Virus record (IMG/VR): IMGVR_UViG_3300005826_000294
Location: 186,001-250,000 of that record
Reading direction: 5' to 3' (one strand)
Length of the DNA stretch: 64,000 nucleotides
Shown here piece after piece: positions 1 through 6,860 of the stretch. Each line of letters begins with the position of its first letter. Position 1 is the stretch's first letter. Below the pieces are notes generated by a model, which was not told the DNA's origin, searched no databases, and saw nothing but the letters and a program-made list of their open reading frames with translations. The position numbers and the translations under genes are program-made.

Positions 1-590
1 TTTTTTGGATTAAAAGCCGCTTTAATATGATATACATTATTAAAATCAAAAGCGGATAAAGGAAAAATATGATCTATATTATAATTCTCAATATCCTTAG
101 GAAAAGGTTTTAAATATTCAATAATAGCATAATAATCTATTCCATACTCATCCGATTTTGTTTTTCCATTAGAATATGTTTTAAAAGCATAATATAACCT
201 TTGTCTTAGTTTTAATATAATAGAAAATATAGGATCATCTTTCCTTTTTTTCTTATTATAACAATTCCTACACATCTTTTTAGAACATATATTTCTATAT
301 TTGCCACAAATATAACAATATCCTTTATTATTATAACAATTTTTACATATCTGGGTTTTTCTTATATGTATCTCTTTTTCATTACCACAAATAGAACATA
401 TCTTTTTCTTATATGTATATGTTCTTTTATAACAAACATCACATAATTTACTTGTATGAAGTTCCTTTATTTTTCCACATTCTATACATTCTTTTTTTTT
501 TCTCTTATATTGTTTATTATAACATTTTTTACATAACATAGGGGATTTTTTTACAATCTTTTGGCCCCCGCAAACGGAACATTTTTTCAT
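1..590 (-). CDS. HNH-type endonuclease with N-terminal CxxC repeats (3' end runs off the window; missing from ORF track)
   Basis: ATG at 590 after AAAGGTG; hand translation MKKCSVCGGQ...CKKCY...CIECG...CDVCY... open to base 1, ending NIDHIFPLSAFDFNN..IKAAFNPK, matching IDHIKPISKFDFND..IKLAFAPEN of 20274..20918. Confidence 0.8.
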   Translation of the reverse strand, partial: MKKCSVCGGQKIVKKSPMLCKKCYNKQYKRKKKECIECGKIKELHTSKLCDVCYKRTYTYKKKICSICGNEKEIHIRKTQICKNCYNNKGYCYICGKYRNICSKKMCRNCYNKKKRKDDPIFSIILKLRQRLYYAFKTYSNGKTKSDEYGIDYYAIIEYLKPFPKDIENYNIDHIFPLSAFDFNNVYHIKAAFNPK

Positions 591-658: not shown

Positions 659-1591
659 CTATTCAAAATTATTCAAATTTTTTATTATTGTGTCTCTAAT
701 GTTCGTATCTCTATAAGATATTATAATATAATTGAACTTATTATCATTATAATACTTTATTTTTTCATTATTATCATATGGGTATTTTCTGCTATTTTTC
801 ATTCCATCTACTTCAATCCAAATCCCATCTGTATAAAAATCACAAGTCCAAGACCTATTATTACAAACTCGCTTTTCATATTCGTAATTTTTTATTAATC
901 CTTTATTCTTTAAATCAAATAAAATATCTCCCGTTTTCTTTTCTATGGAAGATAAATATTTATTGCCATCATTACCCTTATGAATATGTCTTCCATAGAA
1001 AATATCTTTGGTTTTATAATTTTTATCAATTTTCTTCATAATATCTTCCCATAAAATATTATCAAATTTCTTTTTTATAGTATTACAACTATAAGGAAAC
1101 TTACCATTTTCTTTTGCCTTCCTTATACTCCAATACTCTAAACATCTAATATTATTATTTTCTCTATACCATTTTTTTAGAGCATTTATAATATCCTGTT
1201 TATCTATATTTTTGGCATTTATGACAGGAATTTCAGCCTCTAACAGTAGTTTAGTCCAAGACCCAAATATTTTTTTAATTGTTAAAGAAGTATATCTAAT
1301 ATTAGAATATGTAAAATATTCTTCCTGAGATGGAGTTTTACCTATTTTATTATATACATTTATTAAATCATCAATAATATTTTTTTTAGATTTATTTCTC
1401 ACCTGATTTGGCTTCATACCAGATGATAAAAGAGCAATCTCTAATGATCCAAATGCTCTTTTATAAGCATTAATACTATACTTACTACCATTCTTTAAAC
1501 TTAAATCTTCTTTCTTTGGTGTCCTTCCTAAACTATATTTTAAACTAATTAAATTATTAATTAAATCATCATCACTTATTTTATTAGACAC
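659..1591 (-). CDS. Free-standing putative homing endonuclease: homing-endonuclease-associated repeats plus C-terminal PD-(D/E)xK-like domain
   Basis: Repeats LGRTP...Y..AFGS..AL and IGKTPS...FGSW.K.L; C-terminal CDFY..GIWIEVDG; GTG start with GGAG RBS. Confidence 0.65.
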   Translation of the reverse strand: MSNKISDDDLINNLISLKYSLGRTPKKEDLSLKNGSKYSINAYKRAFGSLEIALLSSGMKPNQVRNKSKKNIIDDLINVYNKIGKTPSQEEYFTYSNIRYTSLTIKKIFGSWTKLLLEAEIPVINAKNIDKQDIINALKKWYRENNNIRCLEYWSIRKAKENGKFPYSCNTIKKKFDNILWEDIMKKIDKNYKTKDIFYGRHIHKGNDGNKYLSSIEKKTGDILFDLKNKGLIKNYEYEKRVCNNRSWTCDFYTDGIWIEVDGMKNSRKYPYDNNEKIKYYNDNKFNYIIISYRDTNIRDTIIKNLNNFE

Positions 1592-1604
1592 TTTTTCTCC
1601 AAAT

Positions 1605-1633
1605 AAAAAAGACCCGATTTCTCGGGTCTTTTT
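1605..1633 (-). terminator. Rho-independent terminator after the major capsid gene
   Basis: GACCCGA-GAAA-TCGGGTC stem-loop followed by T6 on minus strand. Confidence 0.85.
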
Positions 1634-1655
1634 AAATATTACTTATTTGGTTTTA

Positions 1656-2189
1656 TTAGCCTACGGCTACAGACTTACGACCAACAGCAACACCTCTTGG
1701 GTTAACAACACCAATTCCTATGATTTCCGATACAACCCATCCAAGCTTTAACTGTTTAGGTTCATCGGCTGGTAGTACCTCGATGTCCTGACGGACAGGC
1801 ATTACACCTACGAACTCTGGATCGGCAGCACCAAAAATAGTTCCAGGTGGAACAATCTTGGAAACGATGATATCCGCACCCCAGATATGAGCATATAGCC
1901 CGGTCTGAAGAACTTCTCTCATTGTTACTGGATCTACCTCACCACCAGTAGCGCCCTGACCACCACCAGTAGCCCAATTTAGAATATCATTAAACTCAAT
2001 AATATTCATGAGGAACTTTGTAGTTACAAGGTCCCAACGATCAATCTGAACCTTGATCTCGGAGAGATCGCGTTTCAGAAGACCAGCATCGGCAACATCC
2101 TGAGCAGTGTTTTCACCACCGAAGGTTGCGTCAGCAGAAAAGTCAAGAGCTGCGAAAATATTAGCATCTTCCTGTGCCTGAATCTCTTG
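1656..2189 (-). CDS. Major capsid protein exon 4 (177 aa + stop)
   Basis: Begins CAA GAG ATT directly after intron-terminal G at 2190. Confidence 0.85.
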   Translation of the reverse strand, partial: QEIQAQEDANIFAALDFSADATFGGENTAQDVADAGLLKRDLSEIKVQIDRWDLVTTKFLMNIIEFNDILNWATGGGQGATGGEVDPVTMREVLQTGLYAHIWGADIIVSKIVPPGTIFGAADPEFVGVMPVRQDIEVLPADEPKQLKLGWVVSEIIGIGVVNPRGVAVGRKSVAVG

Positions 2190-5100
2190 CAAATTGTTAA
2201 TAATTCTAAAGAATTATCCTAATTTCTTAGGTCTACATCTCTCAATGTAGTTCAGACTATATCATCATCCTTTTTCAAGGAGCTTGGCGTTTAGTCGTTG
2301 AGGAGCGAAAGTTTATAACCCATTGAAGGTATAATATAAGGTTTAATTAATTTAGAAAGTTTTATACTATTTTCTTTATTAAAAGTTAAGTAATAGTATT
2401 TCTTTTCCCTATTATTATATTTATAAACATTACAAATTATGTCAAATTTATCAAATATTTTAGTTAAAACTTCATTTTCTTCTTTTGTAAAACTTTCTGT
2501 ACAAAGTTTCATATTATATTTTCTTGTATTACCATCATCCATAAACCATATAGCAATTGAATAAGGTGTTATAAGATTAATTAGTTCTTCTTTGATTATT
2601 TTTTTGTCTTTATAAAATAAATTGTGGAAAAACTCAAAATCTTTATGTCCAATGGTAGTAATACTATATAATGTTGAATTTCTTGTTTTTTGTATTGTTT
2701 TATGAATATCTGTTGTGATAAAATTAGATAATAAATCTTTTTTATATTTAAGATAATCTAATTGTTTTTCACCATGACATACAGCAAATCTTTTTAACTT
2801 TCCTTTGCTAATATGCCCATCACCTAATAAAGATCCTATAACAAATTCTTTTTGTTTTTGTGTTAATGGAACTTGTCGCAAATGATAATATTTTCTTTCA
2901 ACACTGCGAATAGGTTTAATTTTATATTCCTTGAACCATCGGTTTATTGTTCTTTCTCCAACATTATATTGTTTTCCTAATAACTTTATACTTTTTATAG
3001 TTGTTATATATAAATCTAACAACTCTTCTTTTGATGGTTTTGACATAATTTCCTTTCCTGCTGATTGTCTGTTTCATTTTAACAATTTTAACTTTATTAT
3101 CTTTCTAAATTAGCTTCTGTGCTTAATTTATTTAATTAACAAAGTATGTTAAACCTTCAGATGTTCCAGCATACAGCCAAGTTTAAAGCCCGCCGTAGAG
3201 ATTAACGGGCTTTTTGCTGAGCTCTGTCGATAACATTAAACCGACGTCTTCTTACCTCAGCAATTCTTACAGTTGGGTTTGAAACAACTTCAAACTCAGG
3301 AACGGTGACTCTGTCACCGAAGACACGCGATTCAGGAGCAGAACCATTGCTGGAAACAACAACGGCCGCTACATCAATATCACGATCATAGACTGGGAGA
3401 GCACCTTGTGGTACAATATGTTACTCGTCAAAGACGGACCAAATATTTCTATTTGGTTCTTTATGTTTCCATAAAGTTCAGACTATATCATCACCTTATA
3501 AAGGGCTTAGCATTTAGTCGTTGAGGAACGGCAATTTATATTTCATTGAATCAATAATATATTCACTTATCAACTCACATAATTTAATGGAATTATTTTT
3601 ATTAAACGATAAGTAATAGTATTTTTTACCGCGTTTATTATATTCACAAACTTTACATCGTATTTTAAAATTTGTAAAAATTATATATTGAAGAATTTCA
3701 TTTTCTTTTTTAGTAAATCCCTCTGTACATATTTTCATACAATATGGTTTTGCACTTCCATCATCCATATACCATACTGCCAAAGCAAAGGGAGTAATAT
3801 AATGTATTAAATCATTTCTTATGATTTTTTTTCCATTATCATAAAACAATTTATAAAAAAAATTAAAATCTTGGTGTCCTATAGAAGAACAATGTATTAT
3901 AGTAGAGTTTCGAGAAGATTGTATTTGCTTATAAATATTATTTGATAAATTTCCAATAATATCTTTTTTCCAGAGCAGATAATCAAGTTGTTTAATACTA
4001 TGACCCATTCTTAATCTTTTAAACTTTCCTGATTTTGTTAATGAGCCATCACCGAGTAAAGTTCCTACAATGAACTCTCTTTGTTTTTTTGTTAAGGGAA
4101 TTTTTCTTAGAATATAATATTTTCTTTCTACGTTTGATATTTTTGAAATATTATATTCTTCTAACCAATTATTAACAACTTTTTTCCCTACTCCATAAAA
4201 ACTTCCTATTTGATTAATTGTTAATAATTCTTCGGTATATAGTTTTAAAAGTTCTTTTTTTTCAGGAATATATTTTTTTATATTTCCATCTTTTAAAATC
4301 TTACTAACTTTTTTTCTACTAATCCCAAGAATATTACCAATTTCTCGCATTGTTTTTCTTTCACTACAATACATAATTTTTATTTTTTCAAATAATTCCA
4401 TTTTTGCCTTTCCTGCTGATTGTCTGTTTCATTTTAACAATTTTAACTTTATTATCTTTCTAAATTAGCTTCTGTGCTTAATTTATTTAATTAACAAAGT
4501 ATGTTAAACCTTCAGAGTTTCCAGCATATAGCTAAGTTTTCATTTCTAAATCACTTTAGAAAGCCGCTACTCTTAACGGATCTACAACAAGAACTCTTCT
4601 TCCTACACCCTGATAATCAAGGTTTCTTCGAATTGGGTTTGCCCATTTATGTTACAGTTTTCTAATGAAAACGGCTAAAACATTTCTGTTTAGCTCCACA
4701 TTTTTCAACATGGATCGGACTATATCATCATCCAAAAAGGATGTTTGGCATATAGTCTCTGAGGATTTTGAGGTTATTCTTTTAAATTCAATTTGTATTT
4801 CATTGAATCAATAACATAATCATCTATTATATTCTTTAAAAGCCAAGAATTTCTTTTATTAAAGTTTATATAATAATATTTTTTATCATTCCTATTATAT
4901 GCTCCTATTTTAACATTTATATTAAAACAAATTTTTAAAGCATCTTTTAAAATGATATGATCTTTATAAGTAAAGTTTAAACTACATATTCTTAATCCAT
5001 AACCTTTTTCTTCACATGATTTACGATTTAAACTTCCATCATCCATAAACCATATAGCCATAGTAATTGGATTTAAAAAAAGAGCGATATTTTTAGGAAT

Positions 5101-6111
5101 AATTTTTACATTATTATCATAAAACATATCTGCATAAAATTTAAACTCTGAATGTGCTATCGATGTAGCTTTTAATTGATTATGGGTTTTTCCTAGAATA
5201 TTTGTTTCAGTTTCATAATATTTTGTAATAAAAGGTTTTAAGTTATTAAATTTCCATAAAAAATATTCTTTTTGTTTTTTTGAATGACTTAGATAGTATT
5301 TATACATATTATTTGTGTTTTTTCTTTGTTTATATATACATCCATCTCCAAGTAGAGTTCCAATTATTATGTTTTTATGATTTTCCGAAAAAGGTATTTT
5401 CCTAACTTTATCGAATTTTTTACTTGAATAGTTGCTTTTACGACCATATCTTTTTAAGATTTTACTTATTGTGTGTCTATCTACTCCAAAAATTTCTGCT
5501 ATTTTATAAACTTTTTCTCCATTATCACATAGTTTAATAATTTCATTAATTTGATGTTCAGAGAATTTTGTAAAAATAGATGTTTTAAATTTACCATAAT
5601 TTGATATACAAAATATTACTTCATCATAAGTTATGTTAAATTTTTCAGCAACTTGATGTGGAGTAAGACCTTTTGTAAAAGCATCCACTACTATTTTTTT
5701 ATCAACTTTCATAATAACCTCAATCTTTCCTGCTGATTGTCCGCGTTTTAAGCATTTTTACTTAAATTGTTTAGATGAACAGACGCTGTGTCTTGCCCGT
5801 ATGATATTTAAGTAGCTTAAACTTTCGGATGTCCCAGCATATAGCCAAATTATTCGATTGGGATTTCTCCCAAAAGCCACCGCTTAGTTAATGGCCTGAC
5901 CCAGGGCAATCTTACCTTCTTGCGTCATCATAGCTCGCTTAATGAGCTCATCTCTCTGCTGATCAGTATAACTGGGGCGCTGAGCTAAACCAGTATTAGC
6001 TGGCTGAAGCTCTTCTAGCACGCTAGCATACTTCACAATCTGTGAAAGAGCATCGCGGACATTACTACCATTAAGCTGTCCTTGCTGCCCATGAGTACTA
6101 AATAAAGACAT
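1656..6111 (-). CDS. Major capsid protein, spliced: join(6111..5891, 4643..4576, 3413..3205, 2189..1656) = 1032 nt, 343 aa
   Basis: Removing three introns at U|...G| boundaries gives one open frame: ...GKIALGQAM-ANPIRRNLDYQGVGRRVLVVDPL-PQGALPVYDRDID...AQQKAR-QEIQAQED...; exons visibly GC-richer; strong AAGGAGG RBS; follows protease/scaffold and decoration genes and is followed by a terminator. Confidence 0.85.
2190..3204 (-). mobile_element. Group I intron 3 of MCP (1015 nt)
   Basis: Exon ends AAAGCCCGU, P1 pairs with GCGGGCUUU (U-G at splice site); ATGCTGGAA, CAATCAGCAGG, TCAACGACTA and GATATAGTC core motifs; P3 CTTGGC/GCCAAG; terminal G. Confidence 0.92.
2291..3046 (-). CDS. Intron-encoded double-motif LAGLIDADG homing endonuclease
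   Basis: FVIGSLLGDG and IAIWFMDDG motifs; N-terminal HTH-like segment. Confidence 0.9.
   Translation of the reverse strand: MSKPSKEELLDLYITTIKSIKLLGKQYNVGERTINRWFKEYKIKPIRSVERKYYHLRQVPLTQKQKEFVIGSLLGDGHISKGKLKRFAVCHGEKQLDYLKYKKDLLSNFITTDIHKTIQKTRNSTLYSITTIGHKDFEFFHNLFYKDKKIIKEELINLITPYSIAIWFMDDGNTRKYNMKLCTESFTKEENEVLTKIFDKFDIICNVYKYNNREKKYYYLTFNKENSIKLSKLIKPYIIPSMGYKLSLLND
3205..3413 (-). CDS. Major capsid protein exon 3 (209 nt)
   Basis: (T)TA CCA CAA GGT ... GCC CGT in frame with exons 2 and 4. Confidence 0.85.
3414..4575 (-). mobile_element. Group I intron 2 of MCP (1162 nt)
   Basis: Exon ends CCGU, P1 pairs with GCGG; ATGCTGGAA, CAATCAGCAGG, TCAACGACTA, GATATAGTC motifs; terminal G at 3414. 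Confidence 0.92.
3514..4401 (-). CDS. Intron-encoded double-motif LAGLIDADG homing endonuclease
   Basis: FIVGTLLGDG and LAVWYMDDG; two N-terminal HTH-like segments. Confidence 0.9.
   Translation of the reverse strand: MELFEKIKIMYCSERKTMREIGNILGISRKKVSKILKDGNIKKYIPEKKELLKLYTEELLTINQIGSFYGVGKKVVNNWLEEYNISKISNVERKYYILRKIPLTKKQREFIVGTLLGDGSLTKSGKFKRLRMGHSIKQLDYLLWKKDIIGNLSNNIYKQIQSSRNSTIIHCSSIGHQDFNFFYKLFYDNGKKIIRNDLIHYITPFALAVWYMDDGSAKPYCMKICTEGFTKKENEILQYIIFTNFKIRCKVCEYNKRGKKYYYLSFNKNNSIKLCELISEYIIDSMKYKLPFLND
4576..4643 (-). CDS. Major capsid protein exon 2 (68 nt)
   Basis: G + 22 codons (ANPIRRNLDYQGVGRRVLVVDP) + T. Confidence 0.85.
4644..5890 (-). mobile_element. Group I intron 1 of MCP (1247 nt)
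   Basis: Exon ends GGCCAU, P1 pairs with GUGGCU; ATGCTGGGA, CAATCAGCAGG, TCAGAGACTA, GATATAGTCC motifs; terminal G at 4644. Confidence 0.92.
4774..5712 (-). CDS. Intron-encoded double-motif LAGLIDADG homing endonuclease
   Basis: IIIGTLLGDG and MAIWFMDDG; HTH-like N-terminus. Confidence 0.9.
   Translation of the reverse strand: MKVDKKIVVDAFTKGLTPHQVAEKFNITYDEVIFCISNYGKFKTSIFTKFSEHQINEIIKLCDNGEKVYKIAEIFGVDRHTISKILKRYGRKSNYSSKKFDKVRKIPFSENHKNIIIGTLLGDGCIYKQRKNTNNMYKYYLSHSKKQKEYFLWKFNNLKPFITKYYETETNILGKTHNQLKATSIAHSEFKFYADMFYDNNVKIIPKNIALFLNPITMAIWFMDDGSLNRKSCEEKGYGLRICSLNFTYKDHIILKDALKICFNINVKIGAYNRNDKKYYYINFNKRNSWLLKNIIDDYVIDSMKYKLNLKE
5891..6111 (-). CDS. Major capsid protein exon 1 (221 nt)
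   Basis: ATG with AAGGAGG RBS; ends GCC AT| so that the codon is completed to ATG by exon 2. Confidence 0.85.
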
Positions 6112-6143
6112 TTTATCTTTGTCCTCCTTGTTAATTTACTTCC

Positions 6144-6174
6144 AAAAAAGTCCCTCCCCAAAATGGAGAGGGAC
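6144..6174 (-). terminator. Terminator-like hairpin between decoration gene and MCP
   Basis: GTCCCTCTCCA-TTT-TGGGGAGGGAC followed by T6. Confidence 0.7.
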
Positions 6175-6191
6175 GAAAAACATAACTTTAA

Positions 6192-6860
6192 TTAACCTTC
6201 TACATTATACGAAAAAACTGCTCTCACTGCCGCCTCAGTTGCACCAACTAGCGAAGGTGGTGTAGTAACCAAGAATGGCGAAGTCTCGAACTCAAGAAAA
6301 CGGCCAACAAGCTCGGTGGTACTGCCACTTGCAGAACGAGCAGATGTTGGAGTTAATAGGCCAGCAGCAGTAGCATATAGAGCTGCACCTGGATCACAAC
6401 TAGCATTAGCCATTACAAGACCTAGAGTTGCATGAGTATCTACAGCGTCCATAGAAACAGCATAAAGACCTGGCTTATCCCAACAAGTCATCTTCCCACT
6501 TGCGGCTGCGGTGTGAGGACCAAGATTGGTCCCAGTTGTTGAAAGGCCAACAGGGGTCCCAATTACCTGACCAAATAGAGTTCCATATCCAGTTGTACCA
6601 TCATCAAGTAACCATAGTGGGCGAAGACCAGTTGAAATAGTAGTAGTTACAACAGTACGCTTCACATCAGTAAGATTGGTATAACCATCAAGAACATCAA
6701 AAGCTGCCTTTTCAGTTGTACTGTTTGTACGTGCCGCAGCAGTAACAGTACCAATTTCTCCACCCTTAACGGATGAAAGTTCAGTATCCAGCATATCAAA
6801 CTGTCCTAGGGGCTGGACTCCTGACTGATAAATATAAAGAGCCATTTTAATTTCCTCCAT
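6192..6860 (-). CDS. Putative capsid decoration/cement protein (likely start 6845, MALYIY)
   Basis: Immediately upstream of MCP, small, G/T/A-rich; GGAGG RBS before ATG 6845; paralog of 13957..14649. Confidence 0.55.
   Translation of the reverse strand: MEEIKMALYIYQSGVQPLGQFDMLDTELSSVKGGEIGTVTAAARTNSTTEKAAFDVLDGYTNLTDVKRTVVTTTISTGLRPLWLLDDGTTGYGTLFGQVIGTPVGLSTTGTNLGPHTAAASGKMTCWDKPGLYAVSMDAVDTHATLGLVMANASCDPGAALYATAAGLLTPTSARSASGSTTELVGRFLEFETSPFLVTTPPSLVGATEAAVRAVFSYNVEG

What the first reader, a model, noticed from the sequence alone, without database searches (positions are those of the whole stretch)
1656..6111. Major capsid gene split by three group I introns, invisible to ORF calling
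Seen: four exons (221, 68, 209, 534 nt) rejoin into a 343-aa ORF; each intron has a U-G pair at the 5' splice site, P3/P7 core motifs and terminal G. About 3.4 kb of intron interrupts the most highly expressed phage gene, so capsid output depends on three sequential self-splicing events. Established: phage group I introns are mostly in DNA-metabolism genes, with few multi-intron structural genes known.
Basis: seen in the sequence. Interest (0 to 1): 0.72.

Follow-up and report, generated by a model that had tools for sequence, protein, structure and literature searches.

The report
Capsid gene split by three introns
The major capsid gene of an uncultured giant phage from an estuary is broken into four pieces by three mobile self-splicing (group I) introns, and public RNA data show all three removed exactly, so it is a real, well-supported example of a known kind of element.

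Summary
On the minus strand, four exons (6111-5891, 4643-4576, 3413-3205, 2189-1656; 221/68/209/534 nt) join into a 1032-nt ORF of 343 aa. It aligns without a gap over residues 1-343 to uninterrupted ORFs in 51 related IMG/VR contigs (up to 93% identity). A 93%-identical intron-less homologue matches the solved phage G major capsid protein (PDB 6WKK, E 2e-94).

The three intervening sequences (1247, 1162, 1015 nt) are group I introns:
- Each has a U·G pair at the 5' splice site, in a P1 helix whose guide sequence changes with the exon.
- Each ends in G and carries the canonical P/Q/R/S core with the P3-P7 pseudoknot.
- Covariation is strong: 25 of 42 pairs are compensatory, and 0 of 500 shuffles reach this.
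- Each holds an intact double-motif LAGLIDADG homing endonuclease gene in the P6 loop.

Estuary metatranscriptome contigs carry all three exact exon-exon joints. One 1846-nt contig is fully spliced with zero mismatches.

Rfam misses the introns at its gathering threshold because of the ORF insertions. Single capsid-gene introns and three-intron phage genes are already known, so this is a new member of a known kind. Self-splicing in vitro, splicing order and endonuclease activity remain inferred.

The parts
5891..6111 (-). MCP exon 1 (221 nt; ATG at 6111; Shine-Dalgarno AAGGAGG at 6123-6129)
   Evidence: Homologues align from residue 1.
4644..5890 (-). Group I intron 1 (1247 nt). P1 is GGCCAU/GUGGCU with U.G at the splice site; P2 has a GAAA loop; P6 (UUGAGGUUA/UAACCUCAA) brackets the ORF; the intron ends in G.
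   Evidence: RNA joint 4643|5891 is seen in runs X1, X3 and X4. An RF00028 sub-threshold hit of 35.4 bits lies at 4696-4822.
4774..5712 (-). HE1: 312-aa LAGLIDADG_2 homing endonuclease with N-terminal HTH domains, in the P6 loop of intron 1
   Evidence: Pfam PF03161 E 7e-38, HTH_23 and HTH_7. Motifs LLGDG and FMDDG are read.
4576..4643 (-). MCP exon 2 (68 nt; encodes (M)ANPIRRNLDYQGVGRRVLVVDP(L))
   Evidence: 83% identical to phage G gp27 residues 31-53.
3414..4575 (-). Group I intron 2 (1162 nt). P1 is CCGU/GCGG; P2 has a GUGA loop; P10 is GUA/UAC; the intron ends in G.
   Evidence: RNA joint 3411|4574 (2-nt ambiguity, equal to 3413|4576) is seen in X1 and X4. Introns sit at the same site in L011, L032 and L065.
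3514..4401 (-). HE2: 295-aa LAGLIDADG_2 homing endonuclease; its stop codon lies inside the R element (5' strand of P7)
   Evidence: Pfam PF03161 E 2e-38.
3205..3413 (-). MCP exon 3 (209 nt)
   Evidence: 59% identical to phage G gp27 residues 53-122.
2190..3204 (-). Group I intron 3 (1015 nt). P1 is a 9-bp helix AAAGCCCGU/GCGGGCUUU; there is no P2; P10 is AAUCUCU/AGAGAUU; the intron ends in G.
   Evidence: RNA joint 2189|3205 is seen in X1, and a 13-nt loose end in X4 equals the start of exon 4. An RF00028 hit of 39 bits lies at 2233-2393. An intron sits at the same site in L032.
2291..3046 (-). HE3: 251-aa LAGLIDADG_2 homing endonuclease; its stop codon lies inside the R element
   Evidence: Pfam PF03161 E 1e-35; 55% identical to HE2.
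1656..2189 (-). MCP exon 4 (534 nt including the stop at 1656-1658)
   Evidence: 47% identical to phage G gp27.
1601..1628 (-). Hairpin GACCCGA-GAAA-UCGGGUC followed by a U run, just after the MCP stop: likely intrinsic terminator
   Evidence: Read. It is the reason for the weak sRNA-like Rfam hits. The scan did not list it.
6192..6860 (-). Upstream 222-aa ORF of unknown function, at the position of phage G decoration gene gp26 but with no detectable similarity to it. The spliced X1 contig extends a further 615 nt beyond base 6300, enough to span this ORF; that stretch was not itself laid on the window.
3044..3184 (-). 5' core (P3-P6) of intron 3, 95% identical to 4399-4539 of intron 2
   Evidence: the P4-P6 domain is 97% identical.

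Best explanation
The major capsid (HK97-type, phage G gp27-like) gene of an uncultured, AT-rich giant phage is interrupted by three related group I introns. The record is 301.7 kb, estimated 75% complete, and has 30% GC. The gene is transcribed as one precursor. Each intron folds into the group I core: P1 with a U.G pair at the 5' splice site, P3-P9, and the P3-P7 pseudoknot. Each intron is excised and the flanking exons are ligated, giving a 1032-nt mRNA for a 343-aa capsid protein. Each intron carries, in its P6 loop, a gene for a monomeric double-motif LAGLIDADG homing endonuclease. These enzymes presumably cut intron-less capsid alleles of co-infecting relatives, so the intron is copied in by repair (homing). 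Shown here: the anatomy, the covariation, colinearity with intron-less alleles, presence/absence polymorphism at the same sites in relatives, and exact exon joining in RNA. Inferred: autocatalysis with a guanosine cofactor, the order and efficiency of the three splicings, and endonuclease activity and target.
For: Colinearity and capsid identity:
- Phage G gp27 hits the four exons colinearly.
- The spliced protein aligns over residues 1-343 to uninterrupted ORFs in 51 relatives, and with zero gaps to 1032-nt ORFs in L020, L012, L034 and L033.
- The intron-less homologue L020 matches PHROG 2522 'major head protein' at E 3e-76 and PDB 6WKK phage G Gp27 at E 2e-94.

Intron anatomy:
- P1 always has U.G at the splice site, and its guide sequence tracks the exon at seven different insertion contexts.
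- Each intron ends in G.
- The Q element is exact in all three introns, as is the S element.
- RNAalifold recovers P3 (pairing across the ORF), P4, P5, P5a, P5b and P9.
- Across 42 pairs in 11 introns, 92.6% of cells are paired and 25 pairs show compensatory change. None of 500 shuffles reaches this, and slid controls give 33-46%.

Link to the curated family:
- RF00028 hits the 3' halves of introns 3 and 1 at E 2e-9 and 3e-8.
- ORF-less introns in L137 and L141 share the same core blocks and score 86.8 and 79.8 bits against a gathering score of 50.

Endonucleases and mobility:
- Pfam LAGLIDADG_2 matches the three ORFs at E 1e-35 to 2e-38.
- Relatives carry introns at the same sites or lack them.

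RNA evidence:
- Joints 2189|3205, 3411|4574 and 4643|5891 stand in metatranscriptome contigs.
- One 1846-nt contig is fully spliced with 0 mismatches at depth 20.8, against 2-5 for intron pieces.
Against: - Rfam at its gathering threshold finds no group I intron in the window, and the own-genome hits stay below the 50-bit cut-off.
- The RNA evidence is from assembled contigs of RNA libraries, not raw stranded reads. An intron-less strain with identical exons, or DNA carry-over, cannot be formally excluded.
- No DNA run could be listed for comparison.
- Self-splicing was not tested.
- The intron subgroup was not determined.
Confidence: 0.94

Rival explanations
1. The joined RNA contigs come from a co-occurring intron-less strain with identical exons, not from splicing. 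In this genome the insertions would then be unspliced and the capsid gene dead, or the insertions would be tolerated only in a defective genome.
For: Contigs carry no strand or molecule information, and DNA can be present in RNA libraries (caveats printed). Intron presence/absence polymorphism exists in the clade.
Against: The nearest intron-less relatives found are only about 79% identical in DNA, whereas the spliced contig has 0 mismatches over its laid length. Intron pieces of this genome occur in the same runs at 4- to 10-fold lower depth than the exons. The introns have intact, covarying ribozyme cores and intact endonuclease ORFs. The joints fall exactly at U|...G| group I boundaries.
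Confidence: 0.04
2. The insertions are free-standing homing endonuclease cassettes that split the capsid gene into separately translated fragments that reassemble, or they have made it a pseudogene.
For: Split genes with intervening free-standing endonucleases exist in T4-like phages (own knowledge). A run of free-standing endonuclease-like genes lies just downstream of the capsid gene.
Against: Exon 2 is only 68 nt, and neither exon 2 nor exon 3 is open from an ATG or begins on a codon boundary. Group I core elements flank each endonuclease gene. RNA contigs join the exons exactly.
Confidence: 0.01
3. The intervening sequences are inteins or group II introns.
For: LAGLIDADG endonucleases also occur in inteins and in a few group II introns (PMC13190283).
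Against: Stop codons follow each 5' junction at once, and the four exons lie in different frames, so there is no in-frame intein. The sequences are removed at RNA level. The boundaries are U|UAA...G, not GUGYG...AY. No group II family was matched. The P/Q/R/S group I core is present.
Confidence: 0.005

Closest known systems
Capsid-gene group I intron of mycobacteriophage LittleE (Cluster J); the lactococcal phage Tuc2009 capsid intron is cited in the same paper (PMC3706429)
   Same: [quoted passage not shown] There is a U before and a G at the end of the intron. It carries a LAGLIDADG-like endonuclease ORF, it is spliced during late expression, and intron-less relatives exist.
   Different: LittleE has one 819-bp intron with the endonuclease ORF on the opposite strand. 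Here there are three introns in one capsid gene, each with a same-strand LAGLIDADG_2 gene in the P6 loop, in a phage G-like giant phage.
Staphylococcus phage Twort orf142 (three group I introns in one gene; Landthaler and Shub 1999, cited in PMC11878797 and PMC6669764), and Bastillevirinae DNA polymerase and terminase genes with two or three introns (PMC11878797)
   Same: Several related group I introns lie within a single phage protein-coding gene. There is a potential for interplay between tandem introns, such as exon skipping.
   Different: The host genes differ: Bastillevirinae introns sit in polymerase, terminase and nucleotide-metabolism genes. The endonucleases there are mostly HNH, with only one LAGLIDADG_2 case reported. 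No exon-skipping joint was seen here.
Jug (jumbo gut) phages: thousands of group I introns, terL split into 2-3 pieces, splicing shown by metatranscriptome reads (PMC12880540)
   Same: Huge phages whose essential genes are fragmented by group I introns and endonucleases. Splicing is validated by RNA reads that map across the junctions.
   Different: The Jug introns average about 206 nt and are mostly ORF-less. The genes reported as split are terL, nrdD and DNA polymerase, not the capsid gene. They belong to a different phage clade and habitat.
Bacillus phage G (Donellivirus) major capsid protein gp27, PDB 6WKK
   Same: Closest cultured homologue of the spliced protein: 53% identity over residues 49-334. 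Its gene order, with a decoration gene upstream, is comparable. Phage G has at least one gene, endolysin gp23, annotated as a two-piece join.
   Different: The phage G capsid gene is uninterrupted and lacks the roughly 47-residue N-terminal extension.

Membership tests
Group I intron (Rfam RF00028 and the Michel-Westhof definition) | The 5' splice site follows a U that forms a U.G wobble inside P1 with an internal guide sequence | tested here: met
   All three introns, and eight relatives' introns, have it. The guide sequence changes with the exon context: GGCCAU/GUGGCU, CCGU/GCGG, AAAGCCCGU/GCGGGCUUU.
Group I intron (Rfam RF00028 and the Michel-Westhof definition) | The last intron nucleotide is G (omega-G) | tested here: met
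   The introns end ...AAAUG...AUAUUG and ...AAUUUG. The boundaries are fixed by gap-free alignment to intron-less alleles and by the RNA joints.
Group I intron (Rfam RF00028 and the Michel-Westhof definition) | Conserved catalytic core: P3-P8 with P4/P6 and P3/P7 stacks, the P3-P7 pseudoknot and the P/Q/R/S elements | tested here: met
   The elements found are P UAUGCUGG, Q AAUCAGCAGG, R UCA(G/A)(A/C)GACUA and S GAUGAUAUAGUC. P3 pairs across the ORF and crosses P7.
Group I intron (Rfam RF00028 and the Michel-Westhof definition) | Helices supported by compensatory change | tested here: met
   25 of 42 pairs show changes on both sides and 92.6% of cells are paired. None of 500 shuffles reaches this; slid controls give 33-46% (own script on 11 introns).
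Group I intron (Rfam RF00028 and the Michel-Westhof definition) | Scores at or above the Rfam gathering score (50 bits) | tested here: inconclusive
   There is no hit at gathering or at E up to 10 in the window. The own-genome search gives 39 and 35.4 bits (E 2e-9 and 3e-8) on the 3' halves of introns 3 and 1. The 0.75-0.94 kb ORF in P6 splits the model. ORF-less homologues with the same core score 86.8 and 79.8 bits.
Group I intron (Rfam RF00028 and the Michel-Westhof definition) | Precise excision with exon ligation at RNA level | tested here: met
   Three exact joints stand in metatranscriptome contigs of three runs, and one contig is fully spliced with 0 mismatches.
Group I intron (Rfam RF00028 and the Michel-Westhof definition) | Protein-independent, guanosine-initiated self-splicing | not testable with these tools
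   This needs an in vitro splicing assay.
LAGLIDADG homing endonuclease (Pfam PF03161 LAGLIDADG_2) | Matches the family profile above its curated cut-off and carries two LAGLIDADG motifs with conserved acidic residues | tested here: met
   Scores are 130.7, 132.8 and 123.3 bits against a cut-off of 25. The motifs LLGDG and (F/Y)MDDG are present in all three ORFs.
LAGLIDADG homing endonuclease (Pfam PF03161 LAGLIDADG_2) | Cleaves the intron-less allele at or near the insertion site | not testable with these tools
   There is only indirect support: presence/absence polymorphism at identical sites in relatives.
HK97-fold major capsid protein (phage G gp27 type) | Full-length homology to an experimentally established capsid protein | tested here: met
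   The four exons hit gp27 colinearly. The 93%-identical intron-less homologue matches PDB 6WKK at E 2e-94 and PHROG 2522 at E 3e-76. gp27 was detected in phage G virions and is described among HK97-style capsids (PMC12484599). The fold itself was not predicted here.
Intein | An in-frame insertion without stops, removed from the protein | tested here: not met
   In-frame stops follow each 5' junction, and the exons are in different frames. The insertions are removed in RNA.
Group II intron | GUGYG...AY boundaries, domain V, usually a reverse-transcriptase ORF | tested here: not met
   The boundaries are U|UAA...G|. No group II family was matched. The ORFs are LAGLIDADG only.

The most novel reading that the evidence does not exclude
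The capsid gene of this phage G-like clade may be an arena in which one family of LAGLIDADG-bearing group I introns has spread to at least six sites by retargeting its guide sequence. Co-resident introns would exchange modules: introns 2 and 3 share a 97%-identical P4-P6 domain but only 55%-identical endonucleases, and L011 and L065 share 97%-identical 3' tails but only 42%-identical endonucleases. The endonucleases would act as weapons that cut the capsid gene of intron-less co-infecting relatives, an interference competition like that shown for the PhiPA3 intron endonuclease (PMC11620839).
Probability: 0.3. Interest if true: 0.6.

Novelty: new member of a known kind. Interest (0 to 1): 0.45.

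Why it matters
This is a clean, RNA-supported case of the most heavily expressed gene of a giant phage needing three RNA splicing events. Standard gene callers and Rfam at its default threshold miss it entirely, so capsid genes in metagenomic giant-phage genomes can be reported as absent or fragmented for this reason. The clade-wide polymorphism gives a natural data set for three questions: how group I introns retarget, how ribozyme and endonuclease modules recombine, and whether intron endonucleases mediate competition between related phages. That polymorphism spans at least six insertion sites, with intron-less and one-, two- and three-intron alleles. The mechanism itself is textbook.

Tried and rejected
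- Rfam cmscan of the whole window at gathering score, and of 1400-6400 at E up to 10, gave no group I hit. It gave only weak sRNA-like matches caused by the terminator hairpin after the capsid gene.
- Megablast of the region against GenBank phages found nothing.
- Pfam on the isolated exon 1 and exon 4 peptides found nothing.
- Pfam on the full-length homologue gave only a sub-threshold Phage_capsid_4 hit.
- The upstream ORF 6192-6860 shows no similarity to phage G decoration protein gp26 and no Pfam or PHROG hit, so its role is unassigned.
- A search for DNA sequencing runs holding the stretch listed none, so the DNA form could not be checked independently of the assembly.
- Intein, group II intron and split-gene readings were considered and rejected (see rivals).
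- The intron subgroup was not assigned. P8 follows P3' directly, with no P7.1/P7.2, which by my own knowledge argues against the IA2 type usual in T4, SPO1 and Twort. No subgroup models were available.
- Structure prediction was not run, because a solved homologue (6WKK) was found by sequence.
- The test of whether insertion sites sit in conserved DNA was mixed: introns 1 and 3 lie at the 95th and 91st percentiles, intron 2 at the 52nd.
Full report
**1. What is there**

The feature lies on the minus strand. Plain ORF listing shows five ORFs:
- a 75-aa ORF at 5884-6111;
- three ORFs of 312, 295 and 251 aa at 4774-5712, 3514-4401 and 2291-3046;
- a 178-aa ORF at 1656-2192.

GC content is 39-46% over the capsid pieces and 21-25% between them. 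My own count gives 46% for the exons, 25-26% for the introns and 30% for the genome. The three middle ORFs match Pfam LAGLIDADG_2 at E 1e-35 to 2e-38. HE1 and HE2 also have N-terminal helix-turn-helix domains.

**2. Exons and capsid identity**

tblastn of the last fragment against GenBank phages gives Bacillus phage G gp27, the major head protein, as best hit at 47% identity. The phage G gene is uninterrupted.

Phage G gp27 hits four colinear pieces of the window:
- gp27 residues 5-30 at about 5967-5890;
- residues 31-53 at 4642-4574;
- residues 53-122 at 3414-3205;
- residues 111-277 at 2210-1686.

Reading the junction sequences fixes the exons at 6111-5891, 4643-4576, 3413-3205 and 2189-1656. 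Joined they give 1032 nt and a 343-aa protein with no internal stop.

**3. Colinearity with intron-less alleles**

A scan of IMG/VR found 419 relatives, of which 80 were fetched.
- The spliced protein aligns over residues 1-343 to a single uninterrupted ORF in 51 of them. Most of the rest are near full-length or cut by contig ends. Identity reaches 93%.
- At DNA level the spliced CDS aligns with zero gaps to the 1032-nt ORFs of L020, L012, L034 and L033, at about 79% identity. The codons continue across each junction.
- The intron-less L020 protein matches PHROG 2522 'major head protein' at E 3e-76, and the solved phage G capsid protein Gp27 (PDB 6WKK) at E 2e-94.
- gp27 is a virion protein of an HK97-style capsid (PMC12484599).

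The window's protein has about 47 extra N-terminal residues relative to phage G. The relatives share this extension.

**4. The intervening sequences are group I introns**

- *Boundaries.* Each intron follows an exon U and ends in G.
- *P1.* The exon end pairs with an internal guide sequence and forms U.G at the splice site. The pairs are GGCCAU/GUGGCU for intron 1, CCGU/GCGG for intron 2, and a 9-bp AAAGCCCGU/GCGGGCUUU for intron 3. The same rule holds for eight introns in relatives at these and other sites, with the guide changing to match each exon.
- *Core elements.* All carry P (UAUGCUGG), Q (AAUCAGCAGG, exact in all three), R (UCAGAGACUA or UCAACGACUA) and S (GAUGAUAUAGUC, exact in all three).
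- *P3.* It pairs across the endonuclease ORF and covaries: UUUGGC/GCCAAA, CUUAGC/GCUAAG, CUUGGC/GCCAAG. It crosses P7 (GACUA/UAGUC), which gives the group I pseudoknot.
- *Peripheral helices.* P2 (absent in intron 3), P5-P5a-P5b, P8 and three 3' hairpins, mostly with GAAA loops, recur with different sequences.
- *Consensus fold.* RNAalifold on 11 cores with the ORFs removed recovers P3, P4, P5, P5a, P5b and P9.
- *Covariation.* Over 42 pairs, 92.6% of cells are standard pairs and 25 pairs have changes on both sides. None of 500 column shuffles reaches this, and sliding the partners drops pairing to 33-46%.

**5. Link to the curated family**

Rfam finds nothing in the window at gathering score, or at E up to 10. 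This is understandable, because 0.75-0.94 kb of ORF sits in the P6 loop.

A search of the whole genome with RF00028 alone does hit the 3' halves of introns 3 and 1. The scores are 39 and 35.4 bits (E 2e-9 and 3e-8), below the 50-bit cut-off.

The 17-nt Q block occurs in at least 119 IMG/VR contigs. Two short, ORF-less elements among 20 loci tested score 86.8 and 79.8 bits as Intron_gpI. They share the same P, Q, R and S blocks with the three capsid introns, with a short P6 hairpin where the capsid introns hold their ORFs.

**6. RNA evidence**

Nine estuary metatranscriptome runs hold parts of the stretch. Four were laid on 1500-6300.
- The only joints reported are 2189|3205 (skips 1015 nt), 3411|4574 (skips 1162 nt; a 2-nt ambiguity makes it equal to 3413|4576) and 4643|5891 (skips 1247 nt). 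These are exactly the predicted splice junctions.
- One 1846-nt contig in run X1, at depth 20.8, covers 1646-2189, 3205-3411, 4574-4643 and 5891-6300 with no mismatch or gap. It continues about 615 nt further upstream.
- Runs X3 and X4 hold independent contigs with one and two of the joints. A 13-nt loose end in X4 equals the first bases of exon 4.
- Intron-internal pieces are present at depth 2-5.
- No exon-skipping joint was listed.

Caveats: these are assembler contigs from RNA libraries without strand information, and no DNA run could be listed for comparison. The nearest intron-less relatives are only about 79% identical in DNA, so they cannot be the source of a zero-mismatch contig.

**7. 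Mechanism and what remains inferred**

The precursor runs from upstream of the capsid gene to a hairpin followed by a U run just after the capsid stop (1601-1628). Upstream, the spliced contig reaches the edge of the laid stretch at 6300 and has enough further length to span ORF 6192-6860.

Unspliced RNA would terminate translation within 0-6 codons of each 5' junction, because each intron begins with UAA or has an early in-frame stop.

Each endonuclease gene starts 5-10 nt after a purine-rich stretch that is also part of the Q/P6 region. In introns 2 and 3 the gene ends with its stop codon inside the R element. Ribozyme folding and endonuclease translation therefore probably compete, which is an inference.

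Not shown: self-splicing without protein, the splicing order, splicing efficiency, and the activity and targets of the endonucleases.

**8. Wider picture in relatives**

Among the 80 loci, six others carry capsid-gene introns:
- L011, L032 and L065 at the intron-2 site;
- L032 at the intron-3 site;
- L074 at the intron-1 site, plus a second intron 16 nt downstream;
- L035, L073 and L065 at further sites.

This gives at least six insertion sites in the first half of the gene. The window's allele, with three introns, is the most interrupted seen.

Introns 2 and 3 of the window share a 141-nt 5' core at 95% identity. Their P4-P6 domains are 97% identical, against 65-81% for every other pair, yet their endonucleases are only 55% identical. 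L011 and L065 have 97%-identical 3' tails but 42%-identical endonucleases. This suggests gene conversion or module exchange between introns.

**9. Comparison with what is known**

- Single capsid-gene group I introns are described for mycobacteriophage LittleE, with a LAGLIDADG-like ORF and RT-PCR proof, and are cited for lactococcal phage Tuc2009 (PMC3706429).
- Three introns in one phage gene are known from Twort orf142, and from Bastillevirinae polymerase and terminase genes (PMC11878797).
- Huge gut phages have many group I introns validated with metatranscriptomes (PMC12880540).
- A recent multi-omic paper on phage G does not mention introns, although the GenBank record joins its endolysin gene from two pieces.
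- I found no description of a capsid gene with three endonuclease-bearing introns. That is only an absence in the library searched.

The finding is therefore real and well supported, but it is a new member of a known kind.

Noticed in passing
window 3044-3184 vs 4399-4539 (minus strand): Introns 2 and 3 share a 141-nt 5' core at 95% identity, and their P4-P6 domains are 97% identical. Their endonucleases are only 55% identical, and introns at the same sites in relatives differ (65-81%). This suggests gene conversion between co-resident introns.
   Followed up: partly
L011:6755-7791, L065:3765-5077: Two site-2 introns in relatives have 97%-identical 3' ribozyme tails but endonucleases only 42% identical. 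This points to endonuclease gene swapping within a conserved ribozyme.
   Followed up: partly
L074:1097-3495; L035:1786-3092; L073:6581-7752; L065:5295-6328: Relatives carry capsid-gene introns at further sites (about nt 237, 241 and 508 of the CDS). L074 has two introns separated by a 16-nt exon. The clade has at least six insertion sites.
   Followed up: partly
window 3-590 and 659-1591 (minus strand); own genome C1:183890-185923: A run of free-standing endonuclease-like genes lies directly downstream of the capsid gene: a PF18780 'homing endonuclease associated repeat' ORF, a zinc-ribbon/HNH-like ORF, a fourth LAGLIDADG_2 ORF just outside the window, and another ORF whose N-terminus resembles that of the PF18780 ORF.
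   Followed up: partly
window 4514-4539: RNA contigs at 55-153x depth in runs X3 and X4 match only this 26-nt P3-P4 core block, with 2 mismatches. Other, much more abundant group I introns with the same core are expressed in the same estuary samples.
   Followed up: no
window 6150-6174 (minus strand): A strong stem-loop with a U run lies between the upstream 222-aa ORF and the capsid start. The spliced RNA contig reads through it, so it is at most a partial terminator.
   Followed up: no
window 6192-6860 (minus strand): A GC-rich (about 46%) 222-aa ORF has no Pfam or PHROG match. It sits where phage G has its capsid decoration gene gp26, but shows no detectable similarity to it.
   Followed up: partly
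L141:778-1106: An ORF-less group I intron (RF00028, 79.8 bits) with the same core blocks lies next to, or within, a tRNA gene on a viral contig.
   Followed up: no
L135:1-558: A ROOL RNA (RF03087, 309 bits) lies on an IMG/VR contig fetched through the intron Q motif.
   Followed up: no
L001:1-877 (phage G endolysin gp23): The closest cultured relative, phage G, has its endolysin CDS annotated as a two-piece join. This implies an intervening sequence there, although the recent phage G multi-omics paper does not mention introns.
   Followed up: no
own genome C1:95604-98499: A fifth LAGLIDADG_2 ORF (C1:95604-96527) lies beside a stretch with long open frames on both strands, which looks unusually GC-rich for this genome.
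   Followed up: no
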